DNA of 64,000 bases, taken from assembly GCF_006345805.1 (NCBI RefSeq), contig NC_043000.1:1426001-1490000 (forward strand), read 5' to 3'. Numbering within the stretch: position 1 is the stretch's first letter; each line of letters starts with the position of its first letter. This DNA comes from Octopus sinensis. Lineage: Eukaryota. Under the pieces are notes generated by a model, which did not search any database, was not told the origin of the DNA, and worked only from the letters and a program-made list of their open reading frames with translations. Position numbers and translations under genes: made by a program. This document shows, one piece after another, positions 4,425-51,340 of the stretch.

Positions 4425-5045
4425 GTCATCATCATCATCATCATCATCATCATCGTTTAGCGTCCGTTTTCCATGCTAGCATGGGTTGGACGGTTCTACT
4501 GGGGTCTGTGAAGCCGGAAGGCTTCATCAAGCCTAGTCAGATCTGGCAGTGTTTCTACGGCTGGATGCCCTTCCTAACGCCAACCACTCTGTGAGTGTAG
4601 TGGATGCTTTTTACGTGCCACCCGCACAGGTGCCAGACAAAGCTGGCAAACGGCCACGAACGGATGGTGCTTTTTATGTGCCACCGGCACGGGGGCCAGG
4701 CGAGGCTGGCAACAGCCACAAACGGATGGTGGTTTTTACGTGCCACCGGCATGAGGCCAGTCGGGGCGGCGCTGGCAACGGTCAGGAACGGATGGTTCTC
4801 TTACATGCCACCGGCACTGGTAACACATCTGTAATTTCCATTGATCGATTTCGATTCTGATCCTCACTTGCCTCAACAGGTCTTCACAAGTAGAGTTTTG
4901 TGTCCCAAGAAGGGAAGGCATGCATACGTAGGCTGGCTCCATCCCATGTAGAAGGCCACGGGTTATGGTCTCACTTGTCCTGCCGGGTCTTCTCGCGCAC
5001 AGCACACTTCCAGAGGTCTCGGTCTCTAGTCATTTCCTCATTTCC
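4425..5045 (-). mobile_element. RTE-like LINE 3' end (ORF terminus, repeat-rich 3' UTR, (GAT)n tail); most abundant LINE remnant here
   Basis: - strand EEMTRDRDLWKCAVREKTRQDK*; shared core ggagtggttggcgttaggaagggcatccagc. Further copies near 6350-6680(-), 12266-12542(-), 14175-14395(+), 15810-16240(+), 28285-28660(+), 32208-32600(-), 38262-38520(+), 40865-41180(-), 42485-42812(+), 42965-43340(+), 47178-47312(+), 53028-53255(-), 54250-54510(+), 58470-58650(+). Confidence 0.75.
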
Positions 5046-8299: not shown

Positions 8300-8800
8300 T
8301 CATCATCATCATCATCGTTTAACGTCCGCTTTCCATGCTAGCATGGGTTGGACGGTTCAACTGGGGTCTGGGGAGCCAGAAGGCTGCACCAGGCCCAGTC
8401 TGATCTGGCAATGTTTCTACAGCTGGATGCCCTTCCTAACGCCAACCACTCCATGAGTGTAGTGGGTGATTTTATGTGCCACCGACACAGGTGCCAGATG
8501 AGGCTGGCGAACGGCCACGCTCGGATGGTGTTTTTTATGTGCCACCGACACAAGTGCCAGACGAGGCTGGCAGACGGCCACGCTCGGATGGTGTTTTTTT
8601 TTATGTGCCACTGACACAGGTGCCAGACGAGGCTGGCGAACGGCCACGATCGGATGGTGTTTGTTACGTGCCCACAGCACGGAGGCCAGTTGATGCGGTA
8701 CTGGCTACGGCCACGTTCGGATGGTTTTCTTATGTGCCACCGGCACTGGTACCACAAAGATACAAATTCCATTGATGTTCATCTATTATGATTTGGTTTG
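8300..8800 (-). mobile_element. RTE-like 3' UTR copy with 3 x ~63-bp VNTR units
   Basis: units tttttatgtgccaccgacacaggtgccagacgaggctggcgaacggccacgctcggatggtg. Confidence 0.8.
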
Positions 8801-9457: not shown

Positions 9458-11274
9458 AACAGCAAACAAGATGAGGACAAATATCCATCGAATGTAAATA
9501 ATGTAAATGCCTGATTAATTCAAAACAACATGAATAAATGTGCATTACATTTGACAGAGTAGGCACAGGAGCGGCTGTGTGGTAAGTAGCTTGCTTACCA
9601 ACCACACAGTTCCGGGTTCAGTCCCACTGCGTGGCACCTTGGGCAAGTGTCTTCTACTATAGCCTCGGGCCGACCAAAGCCTTGTGAGTGGATTTGGTAG
9701 ACGGAAATTGAAAGAAGCCTGTCGTATATATATGTATATATATATGTGTGTGTGTGTTTGTGTGTCTGTGTTTGTCTCCCCAACATCGCTTGACAACCGA
9801 TGCTGGTGTGTTTACGTCCCCGTAACTTAGCGGTTCGGCAAAAGAGACCGATAGGATAAGTACTGGGCTTACAAAGAATAAGTCCTGGGGTCGATTTGCT
9901 TGACTAAAAAGGCGGTGCTCCAGCATGGCCACAGTCAAATGACTGAAACAAGTAAAAGAGAAAAAGAGAGAAAGAGAGAGTAATCTGATTGCTAAAGGGT
10001 TAACAGGATCCAATAGCTTAGAGGACTGCACTGTGCTCTTGAATCTGTTTCAACATGGTTCTGCAGCTGGATGCCCTTCCTGAGACTAATCACTTTTCAG
10101 AATGTACTTGGTACTTTTTTTTCTTAGCATCAGTGCCAATGAGGTTGCCATGTTACTTACAAGACTAAGGCGGCGAGCTGGCAGAAATGTTAGCACGCCG
10201 GGCGAAATGCTTAGCAGTATTTCGTCTGCCACTACATTCTGAGTTCAAATTCCACCGAGGTCGACTTTGCCTTTCATCCTTTCAGGGTCGATTAAATAAG
10301 TACCAGTTATGCACTGGGGTCGATATAATCGACTTAATCCCTTTGCCTGTCCTTGTTTGTCCCCTCTGTGTTTAGTAAAGAAATAGGTATTTCGTCTGCC
10401 ACTACATTCTGAGTTCAAATTCCACCAAGGTCGACTTTGCCTTTCATCCTTTCAAGGTCGATTAAATAAGTACCAGTTATGCACTGGGGTCGATATAATC
10501 GACTTAATCCCTTTGCCTGTCCTTGTTTGTCCCCTCTGTGTTTAGTAAAGAAATAGGTATTTCGTCTGCCACTACATTCTAAGTTCGAATTCCACCAAGG
10601 TCGACTTTGCCTTTCATCCTTTCAGGGTCGATTAAATAAGTACCAGTTACACACTGGAGTCAATATAATTGACTTAATCCATTTGTCTGTCCTTGTTTGT
10701 CCCTTGTATGTGTAGCCCCTTGTGGGCAGTAAAGAGTAAGAAATAAGACTAACATCCCCTTTAAGTGAGTGAAGCTGTAGTAGAGAGGGAAACAGCTTTA
10801 TGCTATTTGATGAAAGGTTAAAGTATGAAAGAAAAGACTGAACATTAAATGATGATGGTATTGGCAACAGCAATGGTAAGGATGACAAGGACAATGATGA
10901 ATGTATACAGTCATTACATAAAGTCACCTCTTTCACATTTCAATGCTGACCACAAATACTTGCAGATATACTGCATGGGGGACAAATGTGAACAGACCTG
11001 GCAATTTTGTAACAACCTACCAGCTGTTTCTGAGGAAGTCGTCTTCGATATTCAGGAAATATTATATCTTTCATCTTTTCTCTTTTACTTGTTTCGGTCT
11101 TTAGACCGTGGCCATGCCAGAGCACCACCTTGGAAAATTTTCTAGTCAACTGAATCGACCCCAGTATTTATTTTCTTTTTAAGCCTGGTACTTACTGTAT
11201 CAAACTCTTTTGCCAAACCACTAAGTCATGGGGATGTAAGTACACCAACACTAGTTGTCATGTGGTGGTAAGAG

Positions 11275-12271: not shown

Positions 12272-12609
12272 CATCGTTTAACGTCCGCTTTCCATGCTAG
12301 CATGGGTTGGACGGTTCAACTGGGGTCTGGCAAGCTCGAAGGCTGCACCAGGCCAGTCAGATCTGGCAGTGTTTCTACAGCTGGATGCCCTTCCTAACGC
12401 CAACCACTCCGAGAGTGTAGTGGGTGATTTTATGTGCCACCGACACAGGTGCCAGACGAGGCTGGCAGACGGCCATGCTCGGATGGTGTTTTTATGTGCC
12501 ACCGACACAGGTGCCAGATGAGGCTGGCGAACGGCCACGCTCATATATATATATATATATATACGAGAAGAAAAGTATTTATGACAATTATATTTGATTA
12601 ATAATTCAT

Positions 12610-16780: not shown

Positions 16781-17501
16781 CGGAGCTTCACATAGTTTTG
16801 AATTGATAATGTGTTATCTTGTAGCTTCAAGATTTCGATGATATGCTTGTTTGTGTTTAGAATGCGAGAGGCTGAATCTGGCTGGTTTGAACTTAAAACA
16901 GGCAGAATATTTGTGCTGGACGTGTCCAGTTTAAATGCTAAAGGGCTAAGGATATGTTATGGTGTTTAATTAACATATTGTTTATGTTATTTTGTATATA
17001 ACCATTGTATAATTAATGTTCCATTTAACCATTCTATTTATCTGTTGTATTTAAAAATTCATTTAACTGTTATACTCTTTACTCTTTTACTCTTTTACTC
17101 TTTTACTTGTTTCAGTCATTTGACTGCGGCCATGCTGGAGCACCGCCTTTAGTCGAGCAAATCGACCCCGGGACTTATTCTTTGTAAGCCCAGTACTTAT
17201 TCTATCGGCCTCTTTTGCCGAACCGCTAAGTGACGGGGACATAAACACACCAGCATCAGTTGTCAAGCAATGCTAGGGGGACAAACACACACACACACAA
17301 ACACACATACATACACATATATACATATATACGACAGGCTTCTTTCAGTTTCCGTCTACCAAATCCACTCACAAGGCATTGGTCGGCCCGGGGCTATAGC
17401 AGAAGACACTTGCCCAAGATGCCACGCAGTGGGACTGAACCCAGAACCATGTGGTTGGTTAGCAAGCTACTTAACTATTGTCATCAACCTTCTGTTAAGC
17501 T

Positions 17502-17985
17502 ATAAAATTACTATTTTTAAATCTTACAACAAGAGATATTCAGCACCAGTACTTTGTAGTAAAGATTGTTTGCCAACATAACATGGCAGTCCTGGTTTAG
17601 GACGAATGTTGCTGTAATTTTGCCCAGGAGACATCATCTCCAGCTGGCTATATGACACGATCTGTGTCCTTATGTTTTCGAACAAGGGAATCTAGCAACC
17701 CCACTCAGCTCAAAACAATACCAATGTATCGTGATTTCCGGGTTATTTCCCTTCATCAGCACAGAATAATTGTTTGGCTAGAGGTGGCGCTGCCAAATTC
17801 CTGTTTGAAATATATAGTTTTCAAAGTGACAACTAGTCACTGATGTATAAATTACAAAATTACTATTTTTAAATCTCTCAACGAGTGATATTCAGCAACA
17901 GTACTTTGTAGTAAAGATTGTTTGCCAACGTGACATGGCAGTCCTGGTTTAGGACTGCCATGTTGGCAAACAATCTTTACTTCTC
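17502..17985 (-). mobile_element. ~352-bp-unit retrozyme/Penelope-like element (partial tandem dimer) with 5' fold-back
   Basis: ~100-bp direct repeats starting 17504 and 17856; terminal hairpin ~17905-17981; possible TSD ttaagct 17495-17501/17986-17992; hammerhead-like fold 17724-17762. Confidence 0.6.
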
Positions 17986-18244
17986 TTAAGCTGTTATGTT
18001 TAATTCATTAAGATTATTCTCTCTTGATTGCAGAAAAATTTAAGATGCAGGTAATGAGTTTGATCTCTGATTGTCATCATTAAATGTCTTTCTCCGTTGT
18101 ATATTCATAGCTGCAGGCAGGATTTGAATTTGAATTAGTTTTCTTTTTCTAAACTTGTAACTTGCCTGGGTTGAGGGGGCATCAGTGTTGATGGACTGGT
18201 AACTGCTTTCTGCAGTTAAAATTTATGAATTTTCAGTGAATATA

Positions 18245-18857
18245 TAGTGGGGTGCTGAAAAGTTCCTGGCTTTGGGTAAAAGAAAATACAAAAGGATCGG
18301 TTAATTATGATTTTATTCAACACTAGCAGCATAGCCTGGCGTTGCCCGGGTATGTAAGAGCCCCTAGTAGGCAACGACTAATCCCAATCTAGTCCTTTCC
18401 CTCTAGGGAACGAAGGTGCATGTGTAGGTTGCAATGTCTTCTCTTCACTCGAATACTTCTGTGTATACCATGTTCCTAGCTGCCCCTAGCTGTCGAGTTG
18501 TGTCCCCTAGACAGAAAATGTGTTGCATATAAAAAGCTTAGATTTGACCCCATGTCAAATTTATCGATTTTTTTCAGAACTGGGGGAACTTTTCAAAATT
18601 TTCGCTGCGTTAGTTTTGAATTATGACATTGGGCTATGTGTGTGTCAAGTTTCACCAGAATCGGTTGAAAGCCGTGGTCAGGGTGAGGGAACAACCTGAC
18701 AGACACACAGACAGACAAACTGCCGTTTATATAGAGAGAGATATTCCCCTCTCAGATTTATGCAATTATTGCCCTGTAAAAGAACTTAGAAGGTTCGGGC
18801 CTTCATCCAGGCCTTTCACAATACCTGTAAAACTAGGAACTTTTCAGCACCACTTCA
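18245..18857. mobile_element. Mariner-like MITE with nested Helitron
   Basis: TIR ggtgctgaaaagttcct..ttt at both ends, TA flanks; removing 18323-18741 restores ttttattcaacatattcccc. Confidence 0.75.
18323..18741 (-). mobile_element. Non-autonomous Helitron
   Basis: 5'-TC...CTAG-3' on - strand, subterminal GC hairpin, A|T insertion, no TSD. Confidence 0.8.
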
Positions 18858-19004
18858 TATGTTATTTCCGCAGTAAAAGGGTTAATTACAGATCTGCTGT
18901 ATCGAGGTCCACTTGGAACTATTGTTATTACTACCCGCTCTCCCTTTTATTAGGGTATATATCGCTCATGTCTTCGTCATTTTTTTTTTTGTCTTCTGTT
19001 TCAG

Positions 19005-19122
19005 AGATATCCAGAGTTATTTCTCACAGATTGGTATATGGATGGTAAACATGGAATCTAACCTGTCTCGAGGTTCTTCAGTCATGCAAGAACTCAACAA
19101 CAGGTGTAATCTGTTTATTCAG
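19005..19122 (+). CDS. WASHC4: WASHC4 coding exon 3 in window
   Basis: tttcAG|a...cag|GTaag; DIQSYFSQIGIWMVNMESNLSRGSSVMQELNNRCNLFIQ vs human DVQSYYVFVSSWMMKMES...DLTNRCNVFIQ; phase 2 matches previous exon. Confidence 0.93.
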
Positions 19123-19464
19123 GTAAGCCATTGCACCTTGTAGTGTTTATGTTTTTGGTGGTAAAATAGAGTATAATTAATTGTACCTTGCTACTATCAT
19201 ATAGCCCCTATCTCCACTGCATTCAACATGTTCAGCCTCCAAAATATTAGGTACCACTGTTTTACCATATTTGTTTGCTTGATAAATTTATGAATGACCC
19301 CCTCTAGTGTTTCAGAAACTATTAATGCTAGGAAGAAGTTTTCTCCTTTTTTTTTTTTTTTTCCCCACTAATTTTAACTATGTGTGGTTGTGTGATAAGA
19401 ACTTTTCTTCTCAACCGCAATCACATGGTTTGGTTTCTATCTCTCTATCTCTTCACCACACATG

Positions 19465-19505
<41 letters not shown>

Positions 19506-19895
19506 GCTGTCCAGCAACCTCACAGGTCCAGAAGCCCTGTTCTAATCTATGTATGTTGTGGCTTCTTGTCAAAGAATAAATCCTAACATTGGACCTTGTG
19601 CACTGATTTGCCCAGGGGCCTACAATGCTGCTAATATGACCCTGCTTCCCTTTCAACATGTCTTTCTCAACATATCTGTCTCCTCCATCCCCTCTCTCTC
19701 TTTCCTTACTGATGTCTTGCAGCTGTCCTTCTCACTCTTCCATCTTTTTCTCCTTCATCTTTTCCATTTGCTTTCTCTCTCAGCTGTCTTTATCACCCTT
19801 TTTTGTCCTTCCTTCCCATCTTCTTCTCCATTCAGTTTCAAACCATTCCCAATCTTCCCCACCTACCTCTGTCTGTCTATGAATCTTCTACTACC

Positions 19896-19943
19896 TGTCT
19901 ATCTATCTGTCTATTTATCAACCATCTACTATATTTCTCTCTG

Positions 19944-20002
<59 letters not shown>

Positions 20003-20038
20003 ATCCACCCATCTATTTATCTCTCTGTCTATCTACCA

Positions 20039-20090
<52 letters not shown>
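19896..20090. repeat. (CTAT)n and (CT)n microsatellites; many other (TA)n, (CA)n, (CT)n, (CAT)n and (AAT)n tracts across the window
   Basis: direct inspection. Confidence 0.9.
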
Positions 20091-20094
<4 letters not shown>

Positions 20095-20385
20095 CCCTTT
20101 TCATCGAAAACCTACACCACCTTTCTTTTTGTTTCTTTTGTTTTTTTGTTTTTTTCATCCCCCAAAAGAAAAGCTCTACCTTGTAACTTGTCCCATCTGT
20201 GTGCAGCCCTGTGTGGCCAATAAAGAAACTTATTTAATCGTTTTTTTCTTTTTTTTATTTTTTTCTTTCCTTTTTACGATCCCTTTTGATCAAAAACTTA
20301 CCCCACATTTTTTTTCCTCCCCAAAAAGAAAAGCACTACTTTGTAATTTGTCCCGTCCGTGTTCAGCCCCGTGTGGCTAATAAAG

Positions 20386-23300
20386 AAACGTATCATCTAC
20401 CATCTGTCTATTGATCAATCGTCTATCTGTCTGTCTATCTATATTTCTATCTACTGTGTCCATCTATCTGTCCATCTATCTACCATCTGTCTATTGATCA
20501 ATCGTCTATCTGTCTGTCTATCTATATTTCTATCTACTGTGTCATCTATCTGTCCATCTATCTACCATCTGTCTATTGATCAATCGTCTATCTGTCTGTC
20601 TATCTATCTATCTATCTACTGTGTCCATCTATTTCTCTGTCCATCTATCTACCATCTGTCTATTGATCAATCGTCTATCTGTCTGTCTATCTATATTCTA
20701 TCTACTGTGTCATCTATCTGTCCATCTATCTACCATCTGTCTATTGATCAATCGTCTATCTGTCTGTCTATCTATCTATCTATCTACTGTGTCCATCTAT
20801 TTCTCTGTCCATCTATCTACCATCTGTCTATTGATCAATCGTCTATCTGTCTGTCTATCTATATTTCTATCTACTGTGTCATCTATCTGTCCATCTATCT
20901 ACCATCTGTCTATTGATCAATCGTCTATCTGTCTGTCTATCTATCTATCTATCTACTGTGTCCATCTATTTCTCTGTCCATCTATCTACCATCTGTCTAT
21001 TGATCAATCGTCTATCTGTCTGTCTATCTATATTTCTATCTACTGTGTCCATCTATCTGTCCATCTATCTACCATCTGTCTATTGATCAATCGTCTATCT
21101 GTCTGTCTATCTATATTTCTATCTACTGTGTCATCTATCTGTCCATCTATCTACCATCTGTCTATTGATCAATCGTCTATCTGTCTGTCTATCTATCTAT
21201 CTATCTACTGTGTCCATCTATTTCTCTGTCCATCTATCTACCATCTGTCTATTGATCAATCGTCTATCTGTCTGTCTATCTATATTTCTATCTACTGTGT
21301 CCATCTATCTGTCCATCTATCTACTATCTGTCTATTGATCAATCGTCTATCTGTCTGTCTATCTATATTTCTATCTACTGTGTCATCTATTTCTCTGTCC
21401 ATCTATCTACCATCTGTCTATTGATCAATCGTCTATCTGTCTGTCTATCTATATTTCTATCTACTGTGTCCATCTATTTCTCTGTCCATCTATCTACCAT
21501 CTGTCTATTGATCAATCGTCTATCTGTCTGTCTATCTATATTTCTATCTACTGTGTCCATCTATCTGTCCATCTATCTACCATCTGTCTATTGATCAATC
21601 GTCTATCTGTCTGTCTATCTATATTTCTATCTACTGTGTCATCTATTTCTCTGTCCATCTATCTACCATCTGTCTATTGATCAATCGTCTATCTGTCTGT
21701 CTATCTATATTCTATCTACTGTGTCCATCTATTCTCTGTCCATCTATCTACCATCTGTCTATGATCAATCGTCTATCTGTCTGTCTATCTATATTTCTAT
21801 CTACTGTGTCCATCTATCTGTCCATCTATCTACCATCTGTCTATTGATCAATCGTCTATCTGTCTGTCTATCTATATTTCTATCTACTGTGTCATCTATC
21901 TGTCCATCTATCTACCATCTGTCTATTGATCAATCGTCTATCTGTCTGTCTATCTATCTATCTATCTACTGTGTCCATCTATTTCTCTGTCCATCTATCT
22001 ACCATCTGTCTATTGATCAATCGTCTATCTGTCTGTATCTATATTTCTATCTACTGTGTCCATCTATCTGTCCATCTATCTACCATCTGTCTATTGATCA
22101 ATCGTCTATCTGTCTGTCTATCTATATTTCTATCTACTGTGTCATCTATTTCTCTGTCCATCTATCTACCATCTGTCTATTGATCAATCGTCTATCTGTC
22201 TGTCTATCTATATTTCTATCTACTGTGTCCATCTATCTGTCCATCTATCTACCATCTGTCTATTGATCAATCGTCTATCTGTCTGTCTATCTATATTCTA
22301 TCTACTGTGTCATCTATTTCTCTGTCCATCTATCTACCATCTGTCTATTGATCAATCGTCTATCTGTCTGTCTATCTATATTTCTATCTACTGTGTCCAT
22401 CTATTTCTCTGTCCATCTATCTACCATCTGTCTATTGATCAATCGTCTATCTGTCTGTCTATCTATATTTCTATCTACTGTGTCCATCTATTTCTCTGTC
22501 CATCTATCTACCATCTGTCTATTGATCAATCGTCTATCTGTCTGTCTATCTATATTTCTATCTACTGTGTCCATCTATTTCTCTGTCCATCTATCTACCA
22601 TCTGTCTATTGATCAATCGTCTATCTGTCTGTCTATCTATATTTCTATCTACTGTGTCCATCTATTTCTCTGTCCATCTATCTACCATCTGTCTATTGAT
22701 CAATCGTCTATCTGTCTGTCTATCTATATTTCTATCTACTGTGTCCATCTATTTCTCTGTCCATCTATCTACCATCTGTCTATTGATCAATCGTCTATCT
22801 GTCTGTCTATCTATATTTCTATCTACTGTGTCCATCTATTTCTCTGTCCATCTATCTACCATCTGTCTATTGATCAATCGTCTATCTGTCTGTCTATCTA
22901 TATTTCTATCTACTGTGTCCATCTATTTCTCTGTCCATCTATCTACCATCTGTCTATTGATCAATCGTCTATCTGTCTGTCTATCTATATTCTATCTACT
23001 GTGTCCATCTATTTCTCTGTCCATCTATCTACCATCTGTCTATTGATCAATCGTCTATCTGTCTGTCTATCTATATTTCTATCTACTGTGTCATCTATTT
23101 CTCTGTCCATCTATCTATCATCTGTCTATTGATCAATCGTCTATCTGTCTGTCTATCTATATTTCTATCTACTGTGTCCATCTATTTCTCTGTCCATCTA
23201 TCTACCATCTGTCTATTGATCAATCGTCTATCTGTCTGTCTATCTATATTTCTATCTACTGTGTCCATCTATTTCTCTGTCCATCTATCTACCATCTGTC

Positions 23301-26300
23301 TATTGATCAATCGTCTATCTGTCTGTCTATCTATATTTCTATCTACTGTGTCCATCTATTTCTCTGTCCATCTATCTACCATCTGTCTATTGATCAATCG
23401 TCTATCTGTCTGTCTATCTATATTTCTATCTACTGTGTCCATCTATTTCTCTGTCCATCTATCTACCATCTGTCTATTGATCAATCGTCTATCTGTCTGT
23501 CTATCTATATTCTATCTACTGTGTCCATCTATTTCTCTGTCCATCTATCTACCATCTGTCTATTGATCAATCGTCTATCTGTCTGTCTATCTATATTTCT
23601 ATCTACTGTGTCCATCTATCTGTCCATCTATCTACCATCTGTCTATTGATCAATCGTCTATCTGTCTGTCTATCTATATTTCTATCTACTGTGTCATCTA
23701 TTTCTCTGTCCATCTATCTACCATCTGTCTATTGATCAATCGTCTATCTGTCTGTCTATCTATATTTCTATCTACTGTGTCCATCTATTTCTCTGTCCAT
23801 CTATCTACCATCTGTCTATTGATCAATCGTCTATCTGTCTGTCTATCTATATTTCTATCTACTGTGTCCATCTATTTCTCTGTCCATCTATCTACCATCT
23901 GTCTATTGATCAATCGTCTATCTGTCTGTCTATCTATATTTCTATCTACTGTGTCCATCTATTTCTCTGTCCATCTATCTACCATCTGTCTATTGATCAA
24001 TCGTCTATCTGTCTGTCTATCTATATTTCTATCTACTGTGTCCATCTATTTCTCTGTCCATCTATCTACCATCTGTCTATTGATCAATCGTCTATCTGTC
24101 TGTCTATCTATATTTCTATCTACTGTGTCCATCTATTTCTCTGTCCATCTATCTACCATCTGTCTATTGATCAATCGTCTATCTGTCTGTCTATCTATAT
24201 TTCTATCTACTGTGTCCATCTATTTCTCTGTCCATCTATCTACCATCTGTCTATTGATCAATCGTCTATCTGTCTGTCTATCTATATTTCTATCTACTGT
24301 GTCATCTATTTCTCTGTCCATCTATCTACCATCTGTCTATTGATCAATCGTCTATCTGTCTCTATCTATATTTCTATCTTCTGTGTCCATCTATTTCTCT
24401 GTCCATCTATCTACCATCTGTCTATTGATCAATCGTCTATCTGTCTGTCTATCTATCTATCTATCTACTGTGTCCATCTATTTCTCTGTCCATCTATCTA
24501 CCATCTGTCTATTGATCAATCGTCTATCTGTCTGTCTATCTATCTATCTATCTATACTGTGTCCATCTATTTCTCTGTCCATCTATCTACCATCTGTCTA
24601 TTGATCAATCGTCTATCTGTCTATCTATATTTCTATCTACTGTGTCCATCTATTTCTCTGTCCATCTATCTACCATCTGTCTATTGATCAATCGTCTATC
24701 TGTCTGTCTATCTATATTTCTATCTACTGTGTCCATCTATTTCTCTGTCCATCTATCTACCATCTGTCTATTGATCAATCGTCTATCTGTCTGTCTATCT
24801 ATATTTCTATCTACTGTGTCCATCTATTTCTCTGTCCATCTATCTACCATCTGTCTATTGATCAATCGTCTATCTGTCTGTCTATCTATATTTCTATCTA
24901 CTGTGTCCATCTATCTGTCCATCTATCTACCATCTGTCTATTGATCAATCGTCTATCTGTCTGTCTATCTATATTCTATCTACTGTGTCATCTATTTCTC
25001 TGTCCATCTATCTACCATCTGTCTATTGATCAATCGTCTATCTGTCTGTCTATCTATATTTCTATCTACTGTGTCCATCTATTTCTCTGTCCATCTATCT
25101 ACCATCTGTCTATTGATCAATCGTCTATCTGTCTGTCTATCTATATTTCTATCTACTGTGTCCATCTATTCTCTGTCCATCTATCTACCATCTGTCTATT
25201 GATCAATCGTCTATCTGTCTGTCTATCTATATTTCTATCTACTGTGTCCATCTATTTCTCTGTCCATCTATCTACCATCTGTCTATTGATCAATCGTCTA
25301 TCTGTCTGTCTATCTATATTTCTATCTACTGTGTCCATCTATTTCTCTGTCCATCTATCTACCATCTGTCTATTGATCAATCGTCTATCTGTCTGTCTAT
25401 CTATATTTCTATCTACTGTGTCCATCTATTTCTCTGTCCATCTATCTACCATCTGTCTATTGATCAATCGTCTATCTGTCTGTCTATCTATATTTCTATC
25501 TACTGTGTCCATCTATTTCTCTGTCCATCTATCTACCATCTGTCTATTGATCAATCGTCTATCTGTCTGTCTATCTATGTTTCTATCTACTGTGTCCATC
25601 TATTTCTCTGTCCATCTATCTACCATCTGTCTATTGATCAATCGTCTATCTGTCTGTCTATCTATATTTCTATCTACTGTGTCCATCTATTTCTCTGTCC
25701 ATCTATCTACCATCTGTCTATTGATCAATCGTCTATCTGTCTGTCTATCTATATTTCTATCTACTGTGTCATCTATTTCTCTGTCCATCTATCTACCATC
25801 TGTCTATTGATCAATCGTCTATCTGTCTGTCTATCTATATTTCTATCTACTGTGTCCATCTATTTCTCTGTCCATCTATCTACCATCTGTCTATTGATCA
25901 ATCGTCTATCTGTCTGTCTATCTATCTATCTATCTACTGTGTCCATCTATTTCTCTGTCCATCTATCTACCATCTGTCTATTGATCAATCGTCTATCTGT
26001 CTGTCTATCTATATTTCTATCTACTGTGTCCATCTATTTCTCTGTCCATCTATCTACCATCTGTCTATTGATCAATCGTCTATCTGTCTATCTATATTTC
26101 TATCTACTGTGTCCATCTATTTCTCTGTCCATCTATCTACCATCTGTCTATTGATCAATCGTCTATCTGTCTATCTATATTTCTATCTACTGTGTCCATC
26201 TATTTCTCTGTCCATCTATCTACCATCTGTCTATTGATCAATCGTCTATCTGTCTGTCTATCTATATTTCTATCTACTGTGTCATCTATTTCTCTGTCCA

Positions 26301-27410
26301 TCTATCTACCATCTGTCTATTGATCAATCGTCTATCTGTCTATCTATATTTCTATCTACTGTGTCCATCTATTTCTCTGTCCATCTATCTACCATCTGTC
26401 TATTGATCAATCATCTATCTGTCTGTCTATCTATATTTCTATCTACTGTGTCATCTATTTCTCTGTCCATCTATCTACCATCTGTCTATTGATCAATCGT
26501 CTATCTGTCTATCTATATTTCTATCTACTGTGTCATCTATTTCTCTGTCCATCTATCTACCATCTGTCTATTGATCAATCGTCTATTGTCTGTCTATCTA
26601 TATTTCTATCTACTGTGTCATCTATTTCTCTGTCCATCTATCTACCATCTGTCTATTGATCAATCGTCTATCTGTCTGTCTATCTATATTTCTATCTTGT
26701 GTCATCTATTTTGTGTCCATCTATCTACCATCTGTCTATTGATCAATCGTCTATCTGTCTGTCTATCTATATTTCTATCTACTGTGTCCATCTATTTCTC
26801 TGTCCATCTATCTACCATCTGTCTATTGATCAATCGTCTATCTGTCTGTCTATCTATATTTCTATCTACTGTGTCCATCTATTTCTCTGTCCATCTATCT
26901 ACCATCTGTCTATGATCATCGTCTATCTGTCTGTCTATCTATATTTCTATCTACTGTGTCATCTATTCTCTGTCCATCTATCTACCATCTGTCTATTGAT
27001 CAATCGTCTATCTGTCTGTCTATCTATATTTCTATCTACTGTGTCCATCTATCTGTCCATCTATCTACCATCTGTCTATTGATCAATCGTCTATCTGTCT
27101 GTCTATCTATATTTCTATCTACTGTGTCATCTATCTGTCTGTCTATCTATATTTCTATCTACTGTGTCATCTATCTGTCTGTCTATCTATATTTCTATCT
27201 ACTGTGTCATCTATCTGTCTGTCTATCTATATTTCTATCTACTGTGTCATCTATCTGTCTGTCTATCTATATTTCTATCTACTGTGTCATCTATCTGTCT
27301 GTCTATCTATATTTCTATCTACTGTGTCATCTATCTGTCTGTCTATCTATCTATCTATCTACTGTGTCCATCTATTTCTCTGTCCATCTATCTACCATCT
27401 GACTATCTAC
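20386..27410. repeat. ~7 kb tandem satellite, 87-bp main unit (~80 copies), GATA/GACA-derived
   Basis: unit ctgtgtccatctatttctctgtccatctatctaccatctgtctattgatcaatcgtctatctgtctgtctatctatatttctatcta; ATTGATCAAT recurs at 22347 and 22434 (87 bp); ~6 shortened 40-bp units at 27121-27360. Confidence 0.97.
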
Positions 27411-27418
27411 CATTGCAG

Positions 27419-27544
27419 GGTATCCTTTATGCATACAACATCAGTCACATGGTACGTACTGTCATGAATCTACACTTGCTACTGCAGAAAGCTATGACCA
27501 AAACTGCAGTGATTGCCCTCTGTAAACTGCTGGAGCTACTCAAA
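27419..27544 (+). CDS. WASHC4: WASHC4 coding exon 4 in window (126 nt, phase 0-0)
   Basis: ttgcAG|ggt...aaa|GTaagt; GILYAYNISHMVRTVMNLHLLLQKAMTKTAVIALCKLLELLK vs human [42 protein letters not shown]. Confidence 0.95.
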
Positions 27545-27592
27545 GTAAGTGATTACCCCCCTTTGTTTTCTGCTTCCTTCTACTGTAACAGT

Positions 27593-27627
<35 letters not shown>

Positions 27628-27684
27628 CATCTGTTTATTTGTTTGTCTGTCTACCTCTCTCTCTCTCTCTCTTTCTCTCTGCCA

Positions 27685-28197
27685 TCTCTCTCTATATAAA
27701 CGGCAGTTTGTCTGTCTGTGTGTCTGTCAGGTTGTACCCTCACCCTGACCACGGCTTTCAACCGATTCTGATGAAACTTGACACACACATAGCCCAATGT
27801 CATAATTCAAAACCAACGCAGCGAAAATTTTGAAAAGTTCCCCCAGTTCTGAAAGAAATCGATAAATTCGACATGGGGTCGAGAATCTAAGCTTTTTATT
27901 TGCAACACATTTTCTGTTGTAGTTTTCGCAACTTGCAATCAATTTTCACCAAACTCATGGTGAAGCTTAATGTTACCCTAAGAAACTTAATTCTGACGTT
28001 AGTTTTCCATGCAATACCTTACCATCAGAAAAATCTATAAAATCATGCCATTTTGGGAAATCGCGTTCAAATTCAAGATGACATATTTTCGACAATATCT
28101 TTCACAAATTGGCAGAAATTTTTTTTAATTCACAGCGAGCATCATGTCTGTTCCAGGGGCTCTTACATACCCGGGCAATGCCGGTCTATGCTGCTAG
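27685..28197 (+). mobile_element. Non-autonomous Helitron, same family as 18323
   Basis: a|TCtctctctatataaacggcag...cccgggcaatgccggtctatgctgCTAG|t. Confidence 0.82.
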
Positions 28198-28794
28198 TTC
28201 TACAATAAATCAGTGAAGGAACCCTTATGTGGTCATTGAATCTGTTAGAAATGGTTGCTAAATCTCTCATATAACACTCGAGCCCCGTGCTAGTAGGGTA
28301 TTAAGAGCACCATCCTAGCGTGATCATTGCCAGAGCTGCTATCTGGCCTCCATGCTGGTGGCACATAAAAGACACCATTCGAGCGTGATCATTACCAGCA
28401 TCATCTTACTGGCACCTGTGCAGGTGGCATGTGTAAAGGATTCGAGTGAGGTCGTTGCCAGTACTGCCTGACTGGCCCCGTGTCAGTGGCATGTAAAAGC
28501 ACCTACTACACTCTCGGAGTGGTTGGCGTTAGGAAGGGCATCCAGCTGTAGAACACACTGCCAGATCAAGATTGAGGCCTAGTGCATCTGGTTTGCCAGC
28601 CCTCAGTCAAATCATCCAACCCATGCTAACATGGAAAGCGGACGTTAAATGATGATGAACACTCTACTTGCAATGCTATTATCAGTTCAAATATGCCTGT
28701 AGCACATTTGCACTAATAAACAAACCATTCACTGTGTTTTGTCATGGAAAAAATTTCTCATTGTTGACAATGATGTAAATACACCTAGATCACT

Positions 28795-29160
28795 TCGTTA
28801 GTTAGTTAGTTAGTTAGTTAATTTGGTTCAAAAGCAAATAGCAAGGCCATGTAGGGGGACATGGAGTTAAGTACAGGGTGGTGTTCATGTAAAGAGTTCA
28901 GGCCACTTGAGGTCAAGGGAGGCTTTGAACAAAGCGGTCGTCGGCATCTTCACCATCTCGTCTGGCAGCTTGTTCCACGGATCCGCAACCCGGACGGAGA
29001 AAGCTCCTCTCCTTCGATTGAGATGAAATCGTCGCAGGTAGAGCTTTTCGGAATGACCCCGCAGCCGACGCTTCGTGATGGTATTTACACCATTGTGAAC
29101 AGCAAGAAATTTTCTCCATGACAAAACACAGTGAATGGCCTGTTTGTTAGTCCAAACATG
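28795..29160 (-). mobile_element. CR1-clade LINE 3' end, second subfamily
   Basis: RRLRGHSEKLYLRRFHLNRRRGAFSVRVADPWNKLPDEMV; (TAAC)n tail. Confidence 0.82.
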
Positions 29161-29264
29161 CAGCAAGCATCTTTGAATTGGTAATAACATTGCATTTATG
29201 TATATCACTGCTTAATGCTCCTATTTCGTAACACTCTACTGTCTTAATGAAAGACATATTGGAT

Positions 29265-29590
29265 AGGATAGGAGCACTCCGTCGGTTACGACAACGAGGG
29301 TCCCAGCTGATATGATCAACGGAACAGCTTGCTCGTGAAATTAACGTGCAAGTGGCTGAGCACTCCACAGACACATGTACCTCTAACGTAGTTCTCAGGG
29401 AGATTCAGTGTGACACAGAGAGTGACAAGGCCAGTCCTTTGAAATACAGGTACAACTCATTTTTACCAGGTGAGTGGACTGGAGCAACGTGAAATAAAGT
29501 GTCTTGCTAAAGAACACAACGCGTCTCCGGGAATCGAACTCATGACCTTACAGTCGTGAGCTGAGTGCCCTAACCACTAAGCCACGCGCC
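29265..29590 (-). mobile_element. SINE with tRNA head, CORE-like segment and family-C tail; related 2795-3110 (-), 31680-31890 (-)
   Basis: tail identical in type to family C (gagaactacgtta...gttaatttcacgagc...gtaaccgacggagtgc) joined to a different 5' half. Confidence 0.65.
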
Positions 29591-29871
29591 TTCACAATGT
29601 TGTCCTATTTACACTATGCTTGAAAAAAACAGATGGGATGCTCATTGTTGGAATACTTTTGATCGTAGGTCTTCCTGATCAGTAGCACCCAGGGCTAACA
29701 ACAACAACTTGTCAATGAGAAGTCCTTAAAGAGACAGACAGACCCTTGACTCATGGCATTCACTCTCTAAATTATACATCAACCCTTTACCTGCTATCCT
29801 AGAAAGGGGAACAAATATATTGCAGAAATAAAGTAAAAAAAAAATGGGAAAGACTCAAGAGATTAAGACTC

Positions 29872-30340
29872 TATTCCTTGGAGCGTAGGCGGGAAAGATA
29901 TGCCATAATATACATCTGGAAGATCCTGGAAGGACTTGTCCCAAACTTTGGCATCGAGAGTTACACAAATACTAGAACTGACCGCCACTGCATAGTGCCA
30001 AGGACTCCAAATTTGCCATCAAGATGTAGGACAAGATACTGCAATAGCCTGGGCTTCAGAGGTCCACAGCTCTTCAATATCCTCCCGAAGGACCTGAGAG
30101 ACCTGCATGCGGTGGATGTAGGTGTCTTTAAAATAAAGCTGAACCTCTTCCTGTCAGGTGTCCCAACTTCGCGGCAGCAGGTGCAGATGAGGGCAGCTGC
30201 ATCAAACTCTCTCATGCACCAAATGTCAATTGTTAAAAAGCATTTGTGAAGTAAAATTATGTAGCATCACCAAATGGTGGTGCCCCGGCATGGCCATAGC
30301 CCGTGAGCTGAAACTAGATGAAATAATAAATAAATAATAT
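29872..30340 (+). mobile_element. CR1/L2-group LINE 3' end
   Basis: ERRRERYAIIYIWKILEGLVPN...GFRGPQLFNILPKDLR; 3' UTR ending ggtggtgccccggcatggcc...gctgaaac and an (AAAT)n-like tail. Confidence 0.8.
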
Positions 30341-31337
30341 TCTAGAGTAAATATGAGTTAGCTATAGCTGAGATGCTGCTTGAAATGAGGGTCCAGAGCT
30401 GACCAGAGTTATACAACTACAATAAGGAAAAAGAACTGCAGGGAATCTAGTCAGTTATCCAGACTCTTCAAAGCTGAACCTATGTTAAAATGATGATAGG
30501 AGTGGCTGTGTGGTAAGTAGCTTGCTTATGAACCACATGGTTCTGGGTTCAGTCCCACTGCATGGCACCTGGGACAAGTGTCTTCTACTATAGCATCGGG
30601 CCAACCAAAGCCTTGTGAGTGGATTTGGTAGACGGAAACTGAAAGAAGCCCATCGTATATATGTGTATATATGTACAAATGTATGTGTGTGTATATGATT
30701 GTGTGTCTGTGTTTGTCCCCCCAACATCGTTTGACAACCGATGCTGGTGTATTTACGTCCCCGTAACTTAGTGGTTTGGCAAAAGAGACCGATAGAATAA
30801 ATACTCGGCTTACAAAGAATAAGTCCTGGGGTCGATTAGCTCGGCTAAAGGCAGTGCTCCAGCATGGCCTCAGTCAAATGACTGAAACAAGTAAAAGAGA
30901 ATTAGTAGACCTAGCCAACATGCACAGGACAAAAAAGATAGACATAACACCATAAAAAGAATCACAATGGTAGCAGTGATGATGGTAGTGGTAGCAGTGG
31001 TGGCAGCCATAATAGCAGCAGCAGCAGCCGTTCAAGAATTTGGACCTGGAGATCTCCATTTCCAGCGACTTCGAGGGCCACCACCCAGTGGTGTCGGGCG
31101 TCAATGAAGAGCCCTCGACTACAACAAGACAACCAAAGTTTTTTTTTTTCAAGGTCTGGGGTCTCCTGCCCCTTAGCCCTAGACCCTCACCTAATCACCC
31201 TTACTTGTCTTGTTGCTTAACAACAACAACAACAACAGCAGCAGCAGTAGTGGTGGTGGTAAAAACAGTAGTAGTAGTAGTAGTAGTCGTCTTGTCACAT
31301 ACTCATTATTTTTTTTCTTTGTGTTTTCTTGTTTCAG

Positions 31338-31445
31338 GCCATAGAATTCACATTCCACCGTCGGACAATGTTGGTTTCAGAATCAATCAACCAGATAATC
31401 CAACATCTCAGTTACCTGGCTCTGTCTGCTATAAACACAGCACGA
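31338..31445 (+). CDS. WASHC4: WASHC4 coding exon 5 in window
   Basis: tttcAG|gcc...cga|GTaagt; AIEFTFHRRTMLVSESINQIIQHLSYLALSAINTAR vs human [36 protein letters not shown]. Confidence 0.93.
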
Positions 31446-33122
31446 GTAAGTCAACAGTTTTTTTTGGTCCAGGTATCCAGTTTGAGGATACCTTCCTCCC
31501 ACCCATCCAAACAACTTTGGTGGCCCATTAAAGGGCTATTTGTACTGCCTTCCCACCTAACTAAAAGAAAACATAATTTGATGACTAGTTGGTTTATGTA
31601 TATAAATTACCTTTGGCCTTATTCTAACATATAGACTGGTCTTTAATATTAAACCAATGGTTAGTCCACATCACTCCTTAAGGAGCCTACGACCAGTTTT
31701 CTGGTTTCCCCAGTATTTATATTCTTCCCTGAATGGGGCACCAATCCATCATAGGATTACTCATTTTTACCAGCAAGTGGACTGGAGCAATGTGAAATGA
31801 AGTGTTTTACTCATGAACACAGTGCATTCTCTGGTTCAGGAATTGAAACCACAATCTTACAATCATGAGTCGAACACCCTAACCACTAAGCCATATACCT
31901 ACACATTTCAAACCAATACAGTACTACATAACCTCTCAATGATTTACTTCTATGAAACAGACCATTACAAGCCCTAAATGTTTTAAAATTTCATCACATT
32001 ATTTACAACAAAATCTACTTTTGTTTTAGTTTTTTTTTTAATATCAAACCAATAGATTTTATAGTAAATAATGTGATGAAATTTAAAAGCATTTAATTGC
32101 TTGTAATTGTCTTGTTTCATAGCAGTAAATCATTAACAGGTAAATCTCCTCCAGGTGAGGATGCCAGTCACTTGAGGTAATATTCCCAGAGAAGCTACTT
32201 TCTAATTTCATCATCATCATCATCATCATCATCATTTAACGTCCGTTCTCCATGCTAGCATGGGTTGGACAGTTCAACCGGGGATCTGGGAAGCCAGAAG
32301 GCTGCACCAGGCTCCGGTCTTATCTGGCAAAGTTTCTACAGCTGGATGCCCTTCCTAACGCCAACCACTCCGTGAGTGTAGTGGGTGCTTTTTATGTGCC
32401 ACCTGCACTGGTGCCAGGTGAGGCTGGCATCGGCCACGGTCGGATTGGTGCATTTTATGGAAGCCAGTCGAGGCGGCACTGGCTTCGGCTACGATTCGGA
32501 TGGTGCTTTTTACGTGCCACCGACACGGAAGCCAGTCGAGGCGGCGCTGGCATCAGCCACAATTCAGATAGTGCTTTTTACGTACCTCCAGTCCCAGGGC
32601 CCTGATCTGATGTAATATTAAATTACATGTGTTTTTCAAATACACAACTTGACAAATGCAGGGTGTTAAATCAAAATCCATATGAGTATGCAGTCCCAAT
32701 ATCTTATGTACACATTCTTTGAGATGACTAGTTTGTTCCTTCTTGAGCCATGCCTGGCTCATAAGGGCCAGTTTCCCGGTTTCCTTGGCATATAGGTTCC
32801 CCACCTGGATGGGACGCCGGTCTGTCGCAGGTGAGCTGCAAGATGCAGGAGGTAAGAGTGAGAGAAAGTTGTGGCAAAAGAGTCAGCATAAGTTTGCCAT
32901 TACCTTCTGCCTGAGCCGCATGGAGCTTAGGTGTTTCGCTTGTAAACACACACATCACCCGGTCAGAGATTCGAACCCGCGATCCCTCGACCGCGAGTCC
33001 GCTGCTCTAACCACTAGGCCATGTGCCTCCGCGAGATGACTAGTAGTATAAATATTTTAACCCTTCAGTCCACACCCTTATCTCTTTAATTCATCTAAGC
33101 CTCTGTGGTTATTTTATTGCAG

Positions 33123-42456: not shown

Positions 42457-43664
42457 GTAAGTACATGGTAGTAAATTGGTTTTAATAGTGCCGGTGAATA
42501 CGTAAAAATCACCATCCAAACGTGGCAGATGCAGCGCCGCCTGACTGGCATCCGTGTCAGTGACATGTAAAAGCACCAACTGATCATGGCCGTTTGCCAT
42601 CCTCCTCTGGACTCTGTGCTGGTGGCACGTAAAAAGCACCCACTACACTCACGGAGTGGTTGGCATTAAGAAGGGCATCCAGCTGTAGAAACACTGCCAG
42701 ATCAGACTGGAGCCTGGTGGAGCCTCCTTGCTTCCCAGACCCCGGTCGAACCGTCCAACCCATGCTAGCATGGAGAACGGACGTTAGATGATGATGATGA
42801 TGATGATGATGAGTGCCCTAGGTCATGCTTTCAAGTCTTATTACTGCTTTGCAAGTTCTAAACTGCTCCTTATTTAACACTTAATATCTTAGATAAGTTT
42901 GTTGTTATTTAAGATTATAATTTTCTGGAAAATTGACCTCATCATTTAAGCTTATATTTACAAGTAGGGTATTAAGAGCACCATCCGAGCATGATCATTG
43001 CCAGAGCGATTATCTCGCCTCCGTGCCGGTGGCACGTAAAAGAGACCATTCGAGCATGATCATTACCAGCATCGCCTTACTCGCACCTGTGCCGGTGGCA
43101 TGTGCAAAAAGATTCGGGCGAGGTTGTTGCCAGTACTGCCTGACTGGCCCCGTGCCGGTGGCACATAAAAGCACCCACTACATTCTCAGAGTGGTTGGCG
43201 TTAGGAAGGGCATCCAGGTGTAGAAACTCTGCCAGATCAAGATTGAAGCCTGGTGCAGCCATCTGATTCACCAGCCCTCAGTCAAATCATCCAACCCATG
43301 CTAACATGGAAAGCAGACGTTAAACGGTGATGATGATGATACCTACACTATGTTTCTTTTGGTTCAGTTTCTGATTGCTATCAGGTGTCTTATTCTTAGA
43401 TGAGTACAAAAACCCTAACTGGATTCTAGTTAAAGGAATCCTGGAATGAAACATCTGATATCTATTTGAGATCATAATGTAGCATAGATATAAATATTGT
43501 TCTAGAAATAATAGGTTTTTTTGTGCTTCTATTGACAATGCACAGATGGTATGGGGGAATGAATAATTTTTCATTTGACTCTAATGACTCATAGGTCTTC
43601 AGATCAAAAACAATGCAAGGAAGTGCATTGTAACCAATGGTGTATAACAACATCCAGTAGTCTA

Positions 43665-49019: not shown

Positions 49020-49381
49020 AACTTCAAACTCCACCCATCTAACACCCGTGGACATATTTACAAAGTCAGAAAACAGCACAGCTCCCATGACTTCAGGAAA
49101 CATTTTTTCACGCTGAGAGTTGCTGAAGCATGGAACAAACTGCCGGCATCAGTTGTTAGTTGTTGGAGCACTGCATCCTTCAAAACTTCCATGCTTCCTG
49201 AGATTCGCCAACACTACACTTGATTTTCTCCCCTCCATACACACACAAGCATGTATCTGACTCATACATTGTTCACTTTCCACATTTCTACATTACTGCA
49301 TGTACTTTATATGCACTTTCTGACAAGTTATGGTGCACCTGAGCACTGTATACAATAATTTCATCATTATTATTATTATTA
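49020..49381 (+). mobile_element. CR1-clade LINE 3' end
   Basis: TRGHIYKVRKQ...FFTLRVAEAWNKLP, (TAT)n tail. Confidence 0.88.
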
Positions 49382-50762: not shown

Positions 50763-51340
50763 ATATATACATCATCATCATCATCATCGGTTAGTGTCCG
50801 CTTTCCATGCTAGCATGGGTTGGACGGTTCAACTGGGGTCTGGGGAGCCCGAAGGCTGCACCAGGCCAGTCAGATCTGGCAGTGTTTCTACAGCTGGATG
50901 CCCTTCCTAACGCCAACCACTCTGAGAGTGTAGTGGGTGATTTTATGTGCCACCGACACAGGTGCCAGACGAGGCTGGCGAACGGCCACGCTCGGATGGT
51001 GTTTTTTATGTGCCACCGACACAGGTGCCACACGAGGCTGGCAGACGGCCACGCTCGGATGGTGTTTTTTTATGTGCCACCGACACAGGTGCCAGACGAG
51101 GCTGGTAGACGGCCACGCTCGGATGGTGTATTTTATGTGCCACCGACACAGATGCCAGACGAGGCTGGCGAACGTCCACGATCGGATGGTGTTTGTTACG
51201 TGCCCACAGCACGGAGGCCAGTCGATGCGGTACTGGCTACGGCCATGTTCGGATGGTTTTCTTATGTGCCACCGGCGCTGGTACCACAAAGATACAAATT
51301 CCATTGATGTTCATCTATTTTGATTTGGTTTTCACTTGCC
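50763..51340 (-). mobile_element. RTE-like 3' UTR copy with 4 VNTR units
   Basis: same unit and flanks as the 8300 copy. Confidence 0.8.

What the first reader, a model, noticed from the sequence alone, without database searches (positions are those of the whole stretch)
20386..27418. ~7 kb AG-free satellite runs straight into a WASHC4 3' splice site
Seen: the 87-bp unit has no AG on the sense strand. By eye the last AG is at 20384-20385 and the next is the acceptor at 27417-27418, giving an AG-exclusion zone of ~7030 nt. The last unit changes ctgtct to CTGAC (27399-27403), a branch-point consensus with A at -17, so the acceptor region is satellite-like sequence. Each unit also offers TTGAT (branch-like), three CCAT (YCAY) and UC-rich tracts. 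Established: AG-exclusion zones mark branch-point-to-AG scanning and described ones are usually tens to a few hundred nt; YCAY clusters bind Nova/Pasilla and UC-rich tracts bind PTB. The downstream exon is 126 nt and phase 0-0, so skipping keeps the frame. Inference: expansion was tolerated only in this orientation, and array length might modulate exon inclusion.
Basis: partly seen in the sequence, partly recalled or inferred. Interest (0 to 1): 0.7.

Follow-up and report, generated by a model that had tools for sequence, protein, structure and literature searches.

The report
AG-free intron satellite from a LINE tail
A 7-kb tandem repeat with no AG does fill most of one octopus WASHC4 intron and runs into the splice acceptor, but it is the blown-up simple-repeat tail of a jumping gene, and its lack of AG follows from its make-up rather than from any splicing function shown here.

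Summary
There is no AG on the + strand from 20386 to 27416 (7,031 nt; the next longest AG-free gap in the window is 333 nt). An 87-bp unit is repeated about 80 times. The array ends a few bases before the acceptor AG (27417-27418) of a 126-nt, phase 0-0 WASHC4 exon. The only branch-point-like motif in the last 330 nt is CTGAC, with its A at -17. The genome is Octopus sinensis.

The splicing interpretation is not supported.
- The array starts exactly at the 3' end of a LINE fragment. Other copies of that LINE carry a (TATC/TGTC)n tail at the same spot, so the satellite is an expanded, degenerate LINE tail.
- Such tails have no AG by construction. GG and TAA are also absent from the array, and GC occurs once.
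- The 78 aligned units differ by only about 7 independent substitutions. No new AG is then expected by chance (P about 0.5-0.7).
- The YCAY count matches what the base composition gives.
- All seven annotated octopus isoforms keep the exon. The limpet Lottia has the same exon, behind a 212-nt intron.

Gooding et al. 2006 described the same situation: a repeat-made AG-free zone with the branch point at -17. This is an ordinary, extreme case. Array length, polymorphism and any effect on splicing could not be tested.

The parts
19005..19122 (+). WASHC4 exon (about residues 397-436), donor CAG|GTAAGC
19123..27418 (+). Intron of 8,296 nt, 85% of it the AG-free array; 33 AGs counted in 19100-20385, two of them in the exon
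19868..20091 (+). Older degenerate (TCTA)n/(TC)n microsatellite upstream of the LINE fragments
20092..20392 (+). Two adjacent 5'-truncated 3' ends of a dispersed LINE in sense orientation, each ending ...GTGTGGC(C/T)AATAAAGAAAC. The last AG before the zone (20384-20385) lies in this terminal motif
20395..27406 (+). 87-bp tandem array of about 80 units with 25 sequence variants. The 5' end repeats three unit types in order, B-E-C, a 252-bp higher-order unit. The middle has runs of identical units, with 681 nt exactly periodic
20386..27416 (+). AG-free zone of 7,031 nt; also no GG, TAA, TAG or GTRAGT
27007..27391 (+). 40-nt sub-repeat (9.5 copies) derived from part of the unit and lacking TTGAT, at the 3' end of the array
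27399..27403 (+). CTGAC, candidate branch point (A at -17), in the last partial unit where other units read CTGTC
27404..27418 (+). Short A-interrupted pyrimidine tract TATCTACCATTGC plus the acceptor AG; 13 of 20 pyrimidines at -22..-3, the weakest of six acceptors checked in this gene
27419..27544 (+). 126-nt phase 0-0 WASHC4 exon (42 aa, GILYAYNISH...ELLK)
31338..31445 (+). Next WASHC4 exon (108 nt)

Best explanation
This is a young, locus-specific intronic minisatellite. A LINE inserted in sense orientation into this WASHC4 intron of Octopus sinensis. Its 3' simple-repeat tail, (TATC/TGTC)n, degenerated. An 87-bp stretch of the degenerate tail was then amplified in tandem to about 80 copies (7 kb), reaching to within a few bases of the acceptor. 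Every G in this kind of sequence sits in TG or CG, so AG (like GG) is absent from the founder unit. The copies are almost identical, so no AG has had time to arise. The 7-kb 'AG exclusion zone' is therefore a by-product of composition. Splicing most likely uses the ordinary nearby signals: branch point CTGAC at -17, a short pyrimidine tract, then CAG. The exon is most likely constitutive. The array has no AG and no GTRAGT, so it offers neither acceptors nor canonical donors. That makes it inert for splicing in this orientation and explains why it is tolerated. Shown here: the anatomy, the LINE-tail origin and the neutral expectation for AG. Inferred: use of the proximal branch point, constitutive inclusion and inertness.
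For: The array begins right after the LINE terminus ...AATAAAGAAAC. The element is dispersed, with more than 2,000 first-look candidates. Conservation among copies rises toward the 3' end, as in 5'-truncated retroposons. A longer copy carries an upstream ORF with zf-RVT, PF13966, E = 2.6e-8. At the same position, 12 of 26 other copies carry (TATC/TGTC)n tails. TRF also reads the array as degenerate TCTA. In the array AG = 0, GG = 0, GC = 1. There are 8 distinct substitution variants, 6 of them singletons, in 78 units. Only 5-9% of possible substitutions create an AG, giving P(no AG) of 0.5-0.7 for about 7 events. P(AG = 0) is 0.18 for a shuffled unit. Copies above 90% identity occur only at this locus; the roughly 80% matches elsewhere are ordinary TCTA/TCTG microsatellites, each with an AG-free interval of 160-769 nt around the match. 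CTGAC is the only YTNAY within 330 nt of the acceptor. All seven annotated isoforms keep the exon. Lottia has the identical exon, with a 212-nt upstream intron. Gooding et al. 2006 (PMC1431707, section 6) describe a 369-nt AG-free zone caused by an AG-less repeat with the only good branch point at -17, judged unrelated to splicing.
Against: No transcript, lariat or population data could be consulted, so use of the proximal branch point and constitutive inclusion are inferences. The acceptor's pyrimidine tract is the weakest of the six checked (13/20), so the exon could be sensitive to its context. Long AG-free runs are somewhat commoner than CT-free runs on the sense strand in 134 kb of genic sequence (67 vs 42, P = 0.02), so some selection or skew by orientation cannot be excluded. 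No orthologous DNA from O. vulgaris or O. bimaculoides could be obtained to date the LINE and the array, or to tell whether CTGAC is ancestral.
Confidence: 0.8

Rival explanations
1. The zone is a functional AG exclusion zone. AG is kept out by selection so that distal branch points (TTGAT in each unit) or PTB/Nova-type binding along the array can regulate inclusion of the 126-nt exon, with array length as the dial.
For: The zone runs uninterrupted into the acceptor. Each unit has one TTGAT, three YCAY and about 15 YCU. The acceptor's pyrimidine tract is weak. The exon is phase 0-0. There is precedent in the ABCA7 intron-18 VNTR, whose length correlates with exon 19 skipping (PMC6660495).
Against: A consensus branch point sits at -17 and the nearest alternative is at -337. 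Absence of AG is fully expected under neutrality. YCAY is not enriched over composition (P = 0.41). TCTT, a classic PTB motif, is nearly absent: 2 in 7 kb. No annotated isoform skips the exon. The 42 residues are 74% identical to Lottia and the exon boundaries are the same there, so skipping would remove conserved protein.
Confidence: 0.07
2. The array is real, but it survives only because of its orientation. The same expansion in antisense orientation, which would be rich in AG, would have been removed by selection. There is no regulatory role.
For: In sense orientation the array has no AG and no GTRAGT, so no cryptic splice sites. AG-free runs of 100 nt or more outnumber CT-free runs on sense strands, 67 vs 42. 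TC-type runs outnumber GA-type runs in the WASHC4 window, 8 vs 3.
Against: Orientation was set by a single LINE insertion (n = 1). Six stretches from dynein heavy-chain genes show no significant bias (31 vs 25). Short GA-rich runs do occur in WASHC4 introns. A general pyrimidine skew of introns explains the mild asymmetry: AG 0.057 vs CT 0.066.
Confidence: 0.25
3. The 7-kb length is an assembly artefact, an over-expansion or mis-join of a much shorter repeat.
For: Many differences between units are 1-nt losses in short homopolymers (CC to C in 20 units, TTT to TT in 6), as raw long-read errors would give. No second haplotype copy of this exon is present in the assembly for comparison.
Against: The array is structured rather than uniform: a repeated B-E-C order of unit types at the 5' end, runs of identical units in the middle, a distinct 40-nt sub-repeat at the 3' end, no Ns, and unique flanks on both sides. 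A 7-kb array is within long-read length (own knowledge of PacBio-based assemblies).
Confidence: 0.1

Closest known systems
Repeat-caused long AG exclusion zone (Gooding et al. 2006, Genome Biol 7:R1; exon IDB1079466.8106)
   Same: An AG-less repetitive element directly upstream of a 3' splice site produces a very long AG-free zone, while the only good branch point is conventional, at -17 in both cases. The authors judged that case unrelated to splicing.
   Different: The length is 7,031 nt here against 369 nt there; the longest zone quoted in that paper is 1,126 nt. This one is a tandem 87-bp satellite derived from a LINE tail, and it is in an octopus.
Distant-branch-point exons with functional AG exclusion zones (PTB exon 11, nPTB, alpha-tropomyosin, alpha-actinin, OGDH)
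   Same: A long AG-free, pyrimidine-rich stretch precedes the acceptor.
   Different: Those exons lack a proximal branch point and have a strong branch point plus pyrimidine tract at the 5' end of the zone, and the zones are conserved in orthologues. Here a consensus branch point is proximal, and the 5' end of the zone is the end of a LINE.
Intronic VNTRs that affect splicing (ABCA7 intron 18 VNTR; human tandem repeats associated with splicing variation; CFTR intron 8 TG/T tract, the last from own knowledge)
   Same: A multi-kb intronic minisatellite lies next to an exon whose skipping keeps the reading frame. A length-dependent effect is mechanistically conceivable.
   Different: In those cases the link between repeat length and splicing was measured. 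Here there is no evidence of alternative use of the exon.
Satellites and minisatellites born from transposable-element tails or internal repeats (for example the SVA VNTR; TE-derived satellites in molluscs; own knowledge)
   Same: The array sits exactly in the tail position and orientation of a retroelement, and its unit breaks down into the tail motif.
   Different: It is a single-locus expansion, and the 87-mer was not found elsewhere above 90% identity.

Membership tests
Functional AG exclusion zone with distant branch point | AG-free zone of at least 100 nt upstream of the acceptor, much longer than the next AG-to-AG interval upstream | tested here: met
   7,031 nt; upstream AG spacings are tens of nt
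Functional AG exclusion zone with distant branch point | No credible branch point in the conventional position (about -18 to -40) | tested here: not met
   CTGAC with its A at -17
Functional AG exclusion zone with distant branch point | Strong branch point with an adjacent pyrimidine tract near the 5' end of the zone | tested here: inconclusive
   The 5' end is the LINE terminus. The first TTGAT lies about 25 nt into the zone, but it is just the motif repeated once per unit
Functional AG exclusion zone with distant branch point | The zone is conserved in orthologues, and the AG depletion exceeds the neutral expectation | tested here: not met
   The neutral expectation explains the lack of AG. 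The Lottia orthologous intron is 212 nt. Close orthologues could not be fetched
Minisatellite / VNTR | Head-to-tail units of 10-100 bp in an array of kb scale | tested here: met
   87 bp x 82 copies, 96% matches
Minisatellite / VNTR | Copy-number polymorphism between individuals | not testable with these tools
   No reads and no second haplotype were available
Retroelement-tail-derived tandem array | The array abuts the 3' terminus of the element, in tail position and orientation | tested here: met
Retroelement-tail-derived tandem array | Other copies of the element carry the same simple-repeat tail | tested here: met
   12 of 26 copies have (TATC/TGTC)n at that spot
Retroelement-tail-derived tandem array | The element is a non-LTR retrotransposon | tested here: met
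   A zf-RVT ORF lies upstream in a long copy, the copies show a 5'-truncation pattern, and the element is dispersed with more than 2,000 candidates. The LINE clade was not determined
Splicing-modulating intronic tandem repeat | The flanking exon is alternatively included | tested here: not met
   0 of 7 annotated isoforms in O. sinensis, O. vulgaris and O. bimaculoides lack the 42 residues. This rests on annotation only, not on read counts
Splicing-modulating intronic tandem repeat | Inclusion correlates with repeat length | not testable with these tools
   This needs long-read genotypes and RNA-seq
Nova/Pasilla YCAY cluster | YCAY density above what the base composition gives | tested here: not met
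   3 per unit against 2.28 in shuffles, P(>=3) = 0.41

The most novel reading that the evidence does not exclude
The array acts as a natural, length-variable splicing element. About 80 branch-like TTGAT motifs and pyrimidine tracts precede the acceptor with no AG in between. Distal branch points or bound PTB/Nova-like proteins could then tune inclusion of a conserved in-frame WASHC4 exon. This would be a 7-kb test of how far the search from branch point to AG can reach.
Probability: 0.06. Interest if true: 0.65.

Novelty: new member of a known kind. Interest (0 to 1): 0.2.

Why it matters
As it stands, this is a clean worked example rather than a discovery. An extreme AG-free zone need not mean a splicing function, because tandem amplification of a retroelement tail produces one for free. 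It is still useful in three ways.
- It is a caution for genome scans that use the length of the AG-free zone to predict distant branch points, especially in repeat-rich genomes such as those of cephalopods.
- It suggests that the branch point and pyrimidine tract of an ancient exon, kept in every annotated isoform, can lie entirely in repeat-derived sequence.
- It is a natural substrate for asking whether the spliceosome ever uses far-upstream branch sites when no AG intervenes.
If array length did affect inclusion of the exon, this would be an invertebrate counterpart of the human ABCA7 VNTR.

Tried and rejected
- **Orthologous intron DNA from close relatives.** The O. vulgaris gene spans 115 kb, above the 100-kb limit, so no DNA was returned. 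The O. bimaculoides and Acanthosepion products are not on record.
- **Open frame across the array-exon junction.** An exact look-up of the 194-aa frame found nothing. Two homology searches with that frame also found nothing: low-complexity words swamped the first, and the exon-only region gave one candidate and no hit.
- **Comparing gene spans between O. sinensis and O. vulgaris to infer array length.** Rejected, because the first and last exons and the UTRs are not comparable.
- **Second haplotype.** No other copy of the exon exists in the assembly apart from a processed pseudogene.
- **Genome-scale orientation test.** A Pfam search with PF00063 failed. The strand test is therefore small.
- **Rfam scan of 17000-32000.** Nothing found.
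- **Considered and rejected.**
  - A coding role for the long open frames in the array. They exist only because TAA and TAG are absent and TGA occurs once per unit.
  - H-DNA (triplex) formation. The longest pure pyrimidine run in the array is only 7 nt.
Full report
**Observation**

The window is Octopus sinensis chromosome-scale scaffold C4:1,426,001-1,490,000. The scaffold length, 164,836,235, equals that of the contig carrying O. sinensis XP_029634617.

- A string search finds no AG on the + strand between 20384-20385 and 27417-27418. That leaves 7,031 AG-free bases, against 333 for the next longest AG-free gap in the window and 244 for the longest CT-free gap.
- Tandem Repeats Finder reports 20395-27406 as 82.2 copies of an 87-bp unit at 96% matches. 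It also reports the same stretch as a degenerate period-4 TCTA array at 61% matches.

**Gene context**

The three exons 19005-19122, 27419-27544 and 31338-31445 translate to a peptide 100% identical to O. vulgaris WASHC4. It is 51-78% identical to WASHC4 of other animals, all of which carry the WASH-4_N, WASH-7_mid and WASH-7_C domains. The window holds the exons for residues 301 to about 1000 on the + strand, and the coding part of the gene spans about 101 kb. The intron in question is 8,296 nt, of which the array makes up 85%.

**What the array is**

- **LINE fragments.** Directly upstream of the array lie two adjacent copies of a roughly 125-150-bp sequence ending ...GTGTGGC(C/T)AATAAAGAAAC (20092-20392). 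A third copy is at 49376-49498.
- **Nature of the element.**
  - It is highly dispersed in the genome, with 2,072 first-look candidates and 39 further matches at 90-94% identity.
  - Aligned copies are conserved most strongly at the 3' end and progressively less upstream. That is the pattern of 5'-truncated retroposons.
  - A long copy carries an upstream ORF with the zinc-binding domain of non-LTR reverse transcriptases (zf-RVT, E = 2.6e-8).
- **Tail.** In 12 of 26 other copies whose 3' end could be scored, the terminus is followed immediately by a (TATC/TGTC)n microsatellite.
- **Junction.** The WASHC4 array starts at exactly that position: ...AATAAAGAAAC|GTATCATCTACCATCTGTC...
- **Conclusion on origin.** The satellite is the simple-repeat tail of a sense-oriented LINE insertion. 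The tail degenerated, and an 87-bp stretch of it was then amplified.
- **Copies elsewhere.** Copies above 90% identity exist only at this locus. The roughly 80% matches elsewhere are ordinary TCTA/TCTG microsatellites.

**Is the lack of AG more than chance?** No, on three levels.

1. **Composition.** Every G in the array follows T or C. AG = 0, but also GG = 0 and GC = 1, with no TAA or TAG. An 87-mer of this composition lacks AG in 18% of shuffles. Twenty unrelated TCTA/TCTG microsatellites, on either genome strand, each have an AG-free interval of 160-769 nt around the match.
2. **Age.**
   - The 78 alignable units differ mostly by 1-nt and 4-nt indels.
   - There are only 8 distinct substitution variants, 6 of them singletons.
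   - Only 5-9% of possible substitutions would create an AG, and nearly all of those are transversions.
   - For about 7 events, the chance of seeing no AG is 0.5-0.7.
3. **Motifs.** Three YCAY per unit compares with 2.28 expected from composition (P = 0.41). TCTT is nearly absent.

The zone is real, but it is inherited from one AG-free founder unit.

**How the acceptor most likely works**

- The last partial unit reads CTACCATCTGACTATCTACCATTGCAG|G. It matches the start of the unit (CTACCATCTGTCTAT...) except for the T-to-A difference that gives CTGAC. A second ATCTACCAT then runs into TGCAG.
- CTGAC is the only YTNAY in the last 330 nt. The 3' end of the array is a 40-nt sub-repeat that lacks TTGAT.
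- The pyrimidine tract is modest: 13 of 20, against 14-18 in five other acceptors of this gene.
- I infer conventional use of the proximal branch point. Whether CTGAC is ancestral or arose in a satellite copy cannot be decided without an outgroup.

**Is the exon regulated?**

- All seven annotated WASHC4 isoforms of O. sinensis, O. vulgaris and O. bimaculoides contain the 42 residues. They differ only by a two-residue KR insertion and at the ends.
- In the limpet Lottia gigantea the orthologous exon is also 126 nt with the same phase and boundaries, and it is 74% identical in protein. The upstream intron there is only 212 nt.
- The exon is therefore old and conserved, and it is present in every model. 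Frame-preserving skipping is possible arithmetically, but nothing found here supports it.

**Orientation**

The orientation of the array was fixed by one LINE insertion. In sense orientation it contains no AG and no GTRAGT, so it offers no cryptic acceptors or canonical donors. That plausibly makes it harmless.

I made a small test on 134 kb of sequence with known gene strand: WASHC4 plus six stretches beside dynein heavy-chain exons. AG-free runs of 100 nt or more outnumbered CT-free runs 67 to 42 on the sense strand (P = 0.02). The six non-WASHC4 stretches alone gave 31 to 25. Sense-strand AG is also generally rarer than CT. This is weak and does not separate selection from compositional skew.

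**Comparison with what is known**

- Gooding et al. 2006 introduced AG exclusion zones. They already list an exon with a 369-nt zone caused by an AG-less repeat and the only good branch point at -17, judged unrelated to splicing. They also list a 1,126-nt zone in PTPRS. The present case is the same kind, about six times longer than that 1,126-nt zone.
- It fails the defining features of a distant-branch-point exon.
- The nearest functional analogue would be the ABCA7 intron-18 VNTR (0.3 to more than 10 kb), whose length correlates with exon 19 skipping. No comparable evidence exists here.

**Caveats**

- Array length and polymorphism could not be checked against reads.
- Many differences between units are homopolymer-length changes that could be long-read errors.
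- The structured layout speaks for a real array: an ordered repeat of unit types at the 5' end, a 681-nt exactly periodic core and a distinct 3' sub-repeat.
- No Rfam family lies in or near the intron.

**Verdict**

This is a new, extreme member of a known kind, and interest is low.

Noticed in passing
G000:C9495:74593-76293 (- strand): A second, intronless match to WASHC4 residues 661-1129 with many in-frame stops. It is most likely a processed pseudogene.
   Followed up: no
L063:2852-3563 (G000:C4:1418851-1419562): Another WASHC4 intron holds a 711-nt (ACAT/ACAC)n array that is free of both AG and CT. It ends about 95 nt before the acceptor of the exon for residues 217-262, and one AG lies 43 nt before that acceptor. 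Simple repeats close to acceptors thus occur more than once in this gene.
   Followed up: partly
window 20219-20224 and 20379-20384: Both LINE ends carry AATAAA in sense orientation. The second is followed by the GU/U-rich array, so together they look like a composite poly(A) signal inside the intron. Whether it is ever used is unknown.
   Followed up: no
window 20347-27748 (+ strand): The array has no TAA or TAG and only one TGA per 87-nt unit (87 = 29 codons), so two frames stay open. Stop-to-stop frames reach 401 aa. Low-complexity C-terminal extensions on some deposited cephalopod WASHC4 models (P0002, P0024, P0025) look like translated repeats of this sort.
   Followed up: partly
window 4605-4817, 8470-8754, 12423-12542, 50941-51274, 63060-63471; reverse orientation at 42974-43100 and 54248-54358: A 62-66-bp G+C-rich unit (TTTTATGTGCCACCGACACAGGTGCCAGACGAGGCTGGC...) recurs as short tandem arrays at many places in the gene, on both strands. 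It probably belongs to an abundant interspersed element.
   Followed up: no
window 10217-10703 and 50095-50459: Tandem duplications of 170 bp (x2.9, 96%) and 184 bp (x2.0, 95%) with SINE-like sequence.
   Followed up: no
window 2104 / 19005 junction: Annotated isoforms differ by two residues (TR-KR-DIQ versus TR-DIQ) at the junction before the upstream exon. This is a 6-nt alternative splice event unrelated to the array.
   Followed up: no
window 49100-49375: Just upstream of the third LINE-end copy lies the 3' end of a different retroelement with an (ATT)n tail. Insertion next to or into simple-repeat tails may be recurrent here.
   Followed up: no
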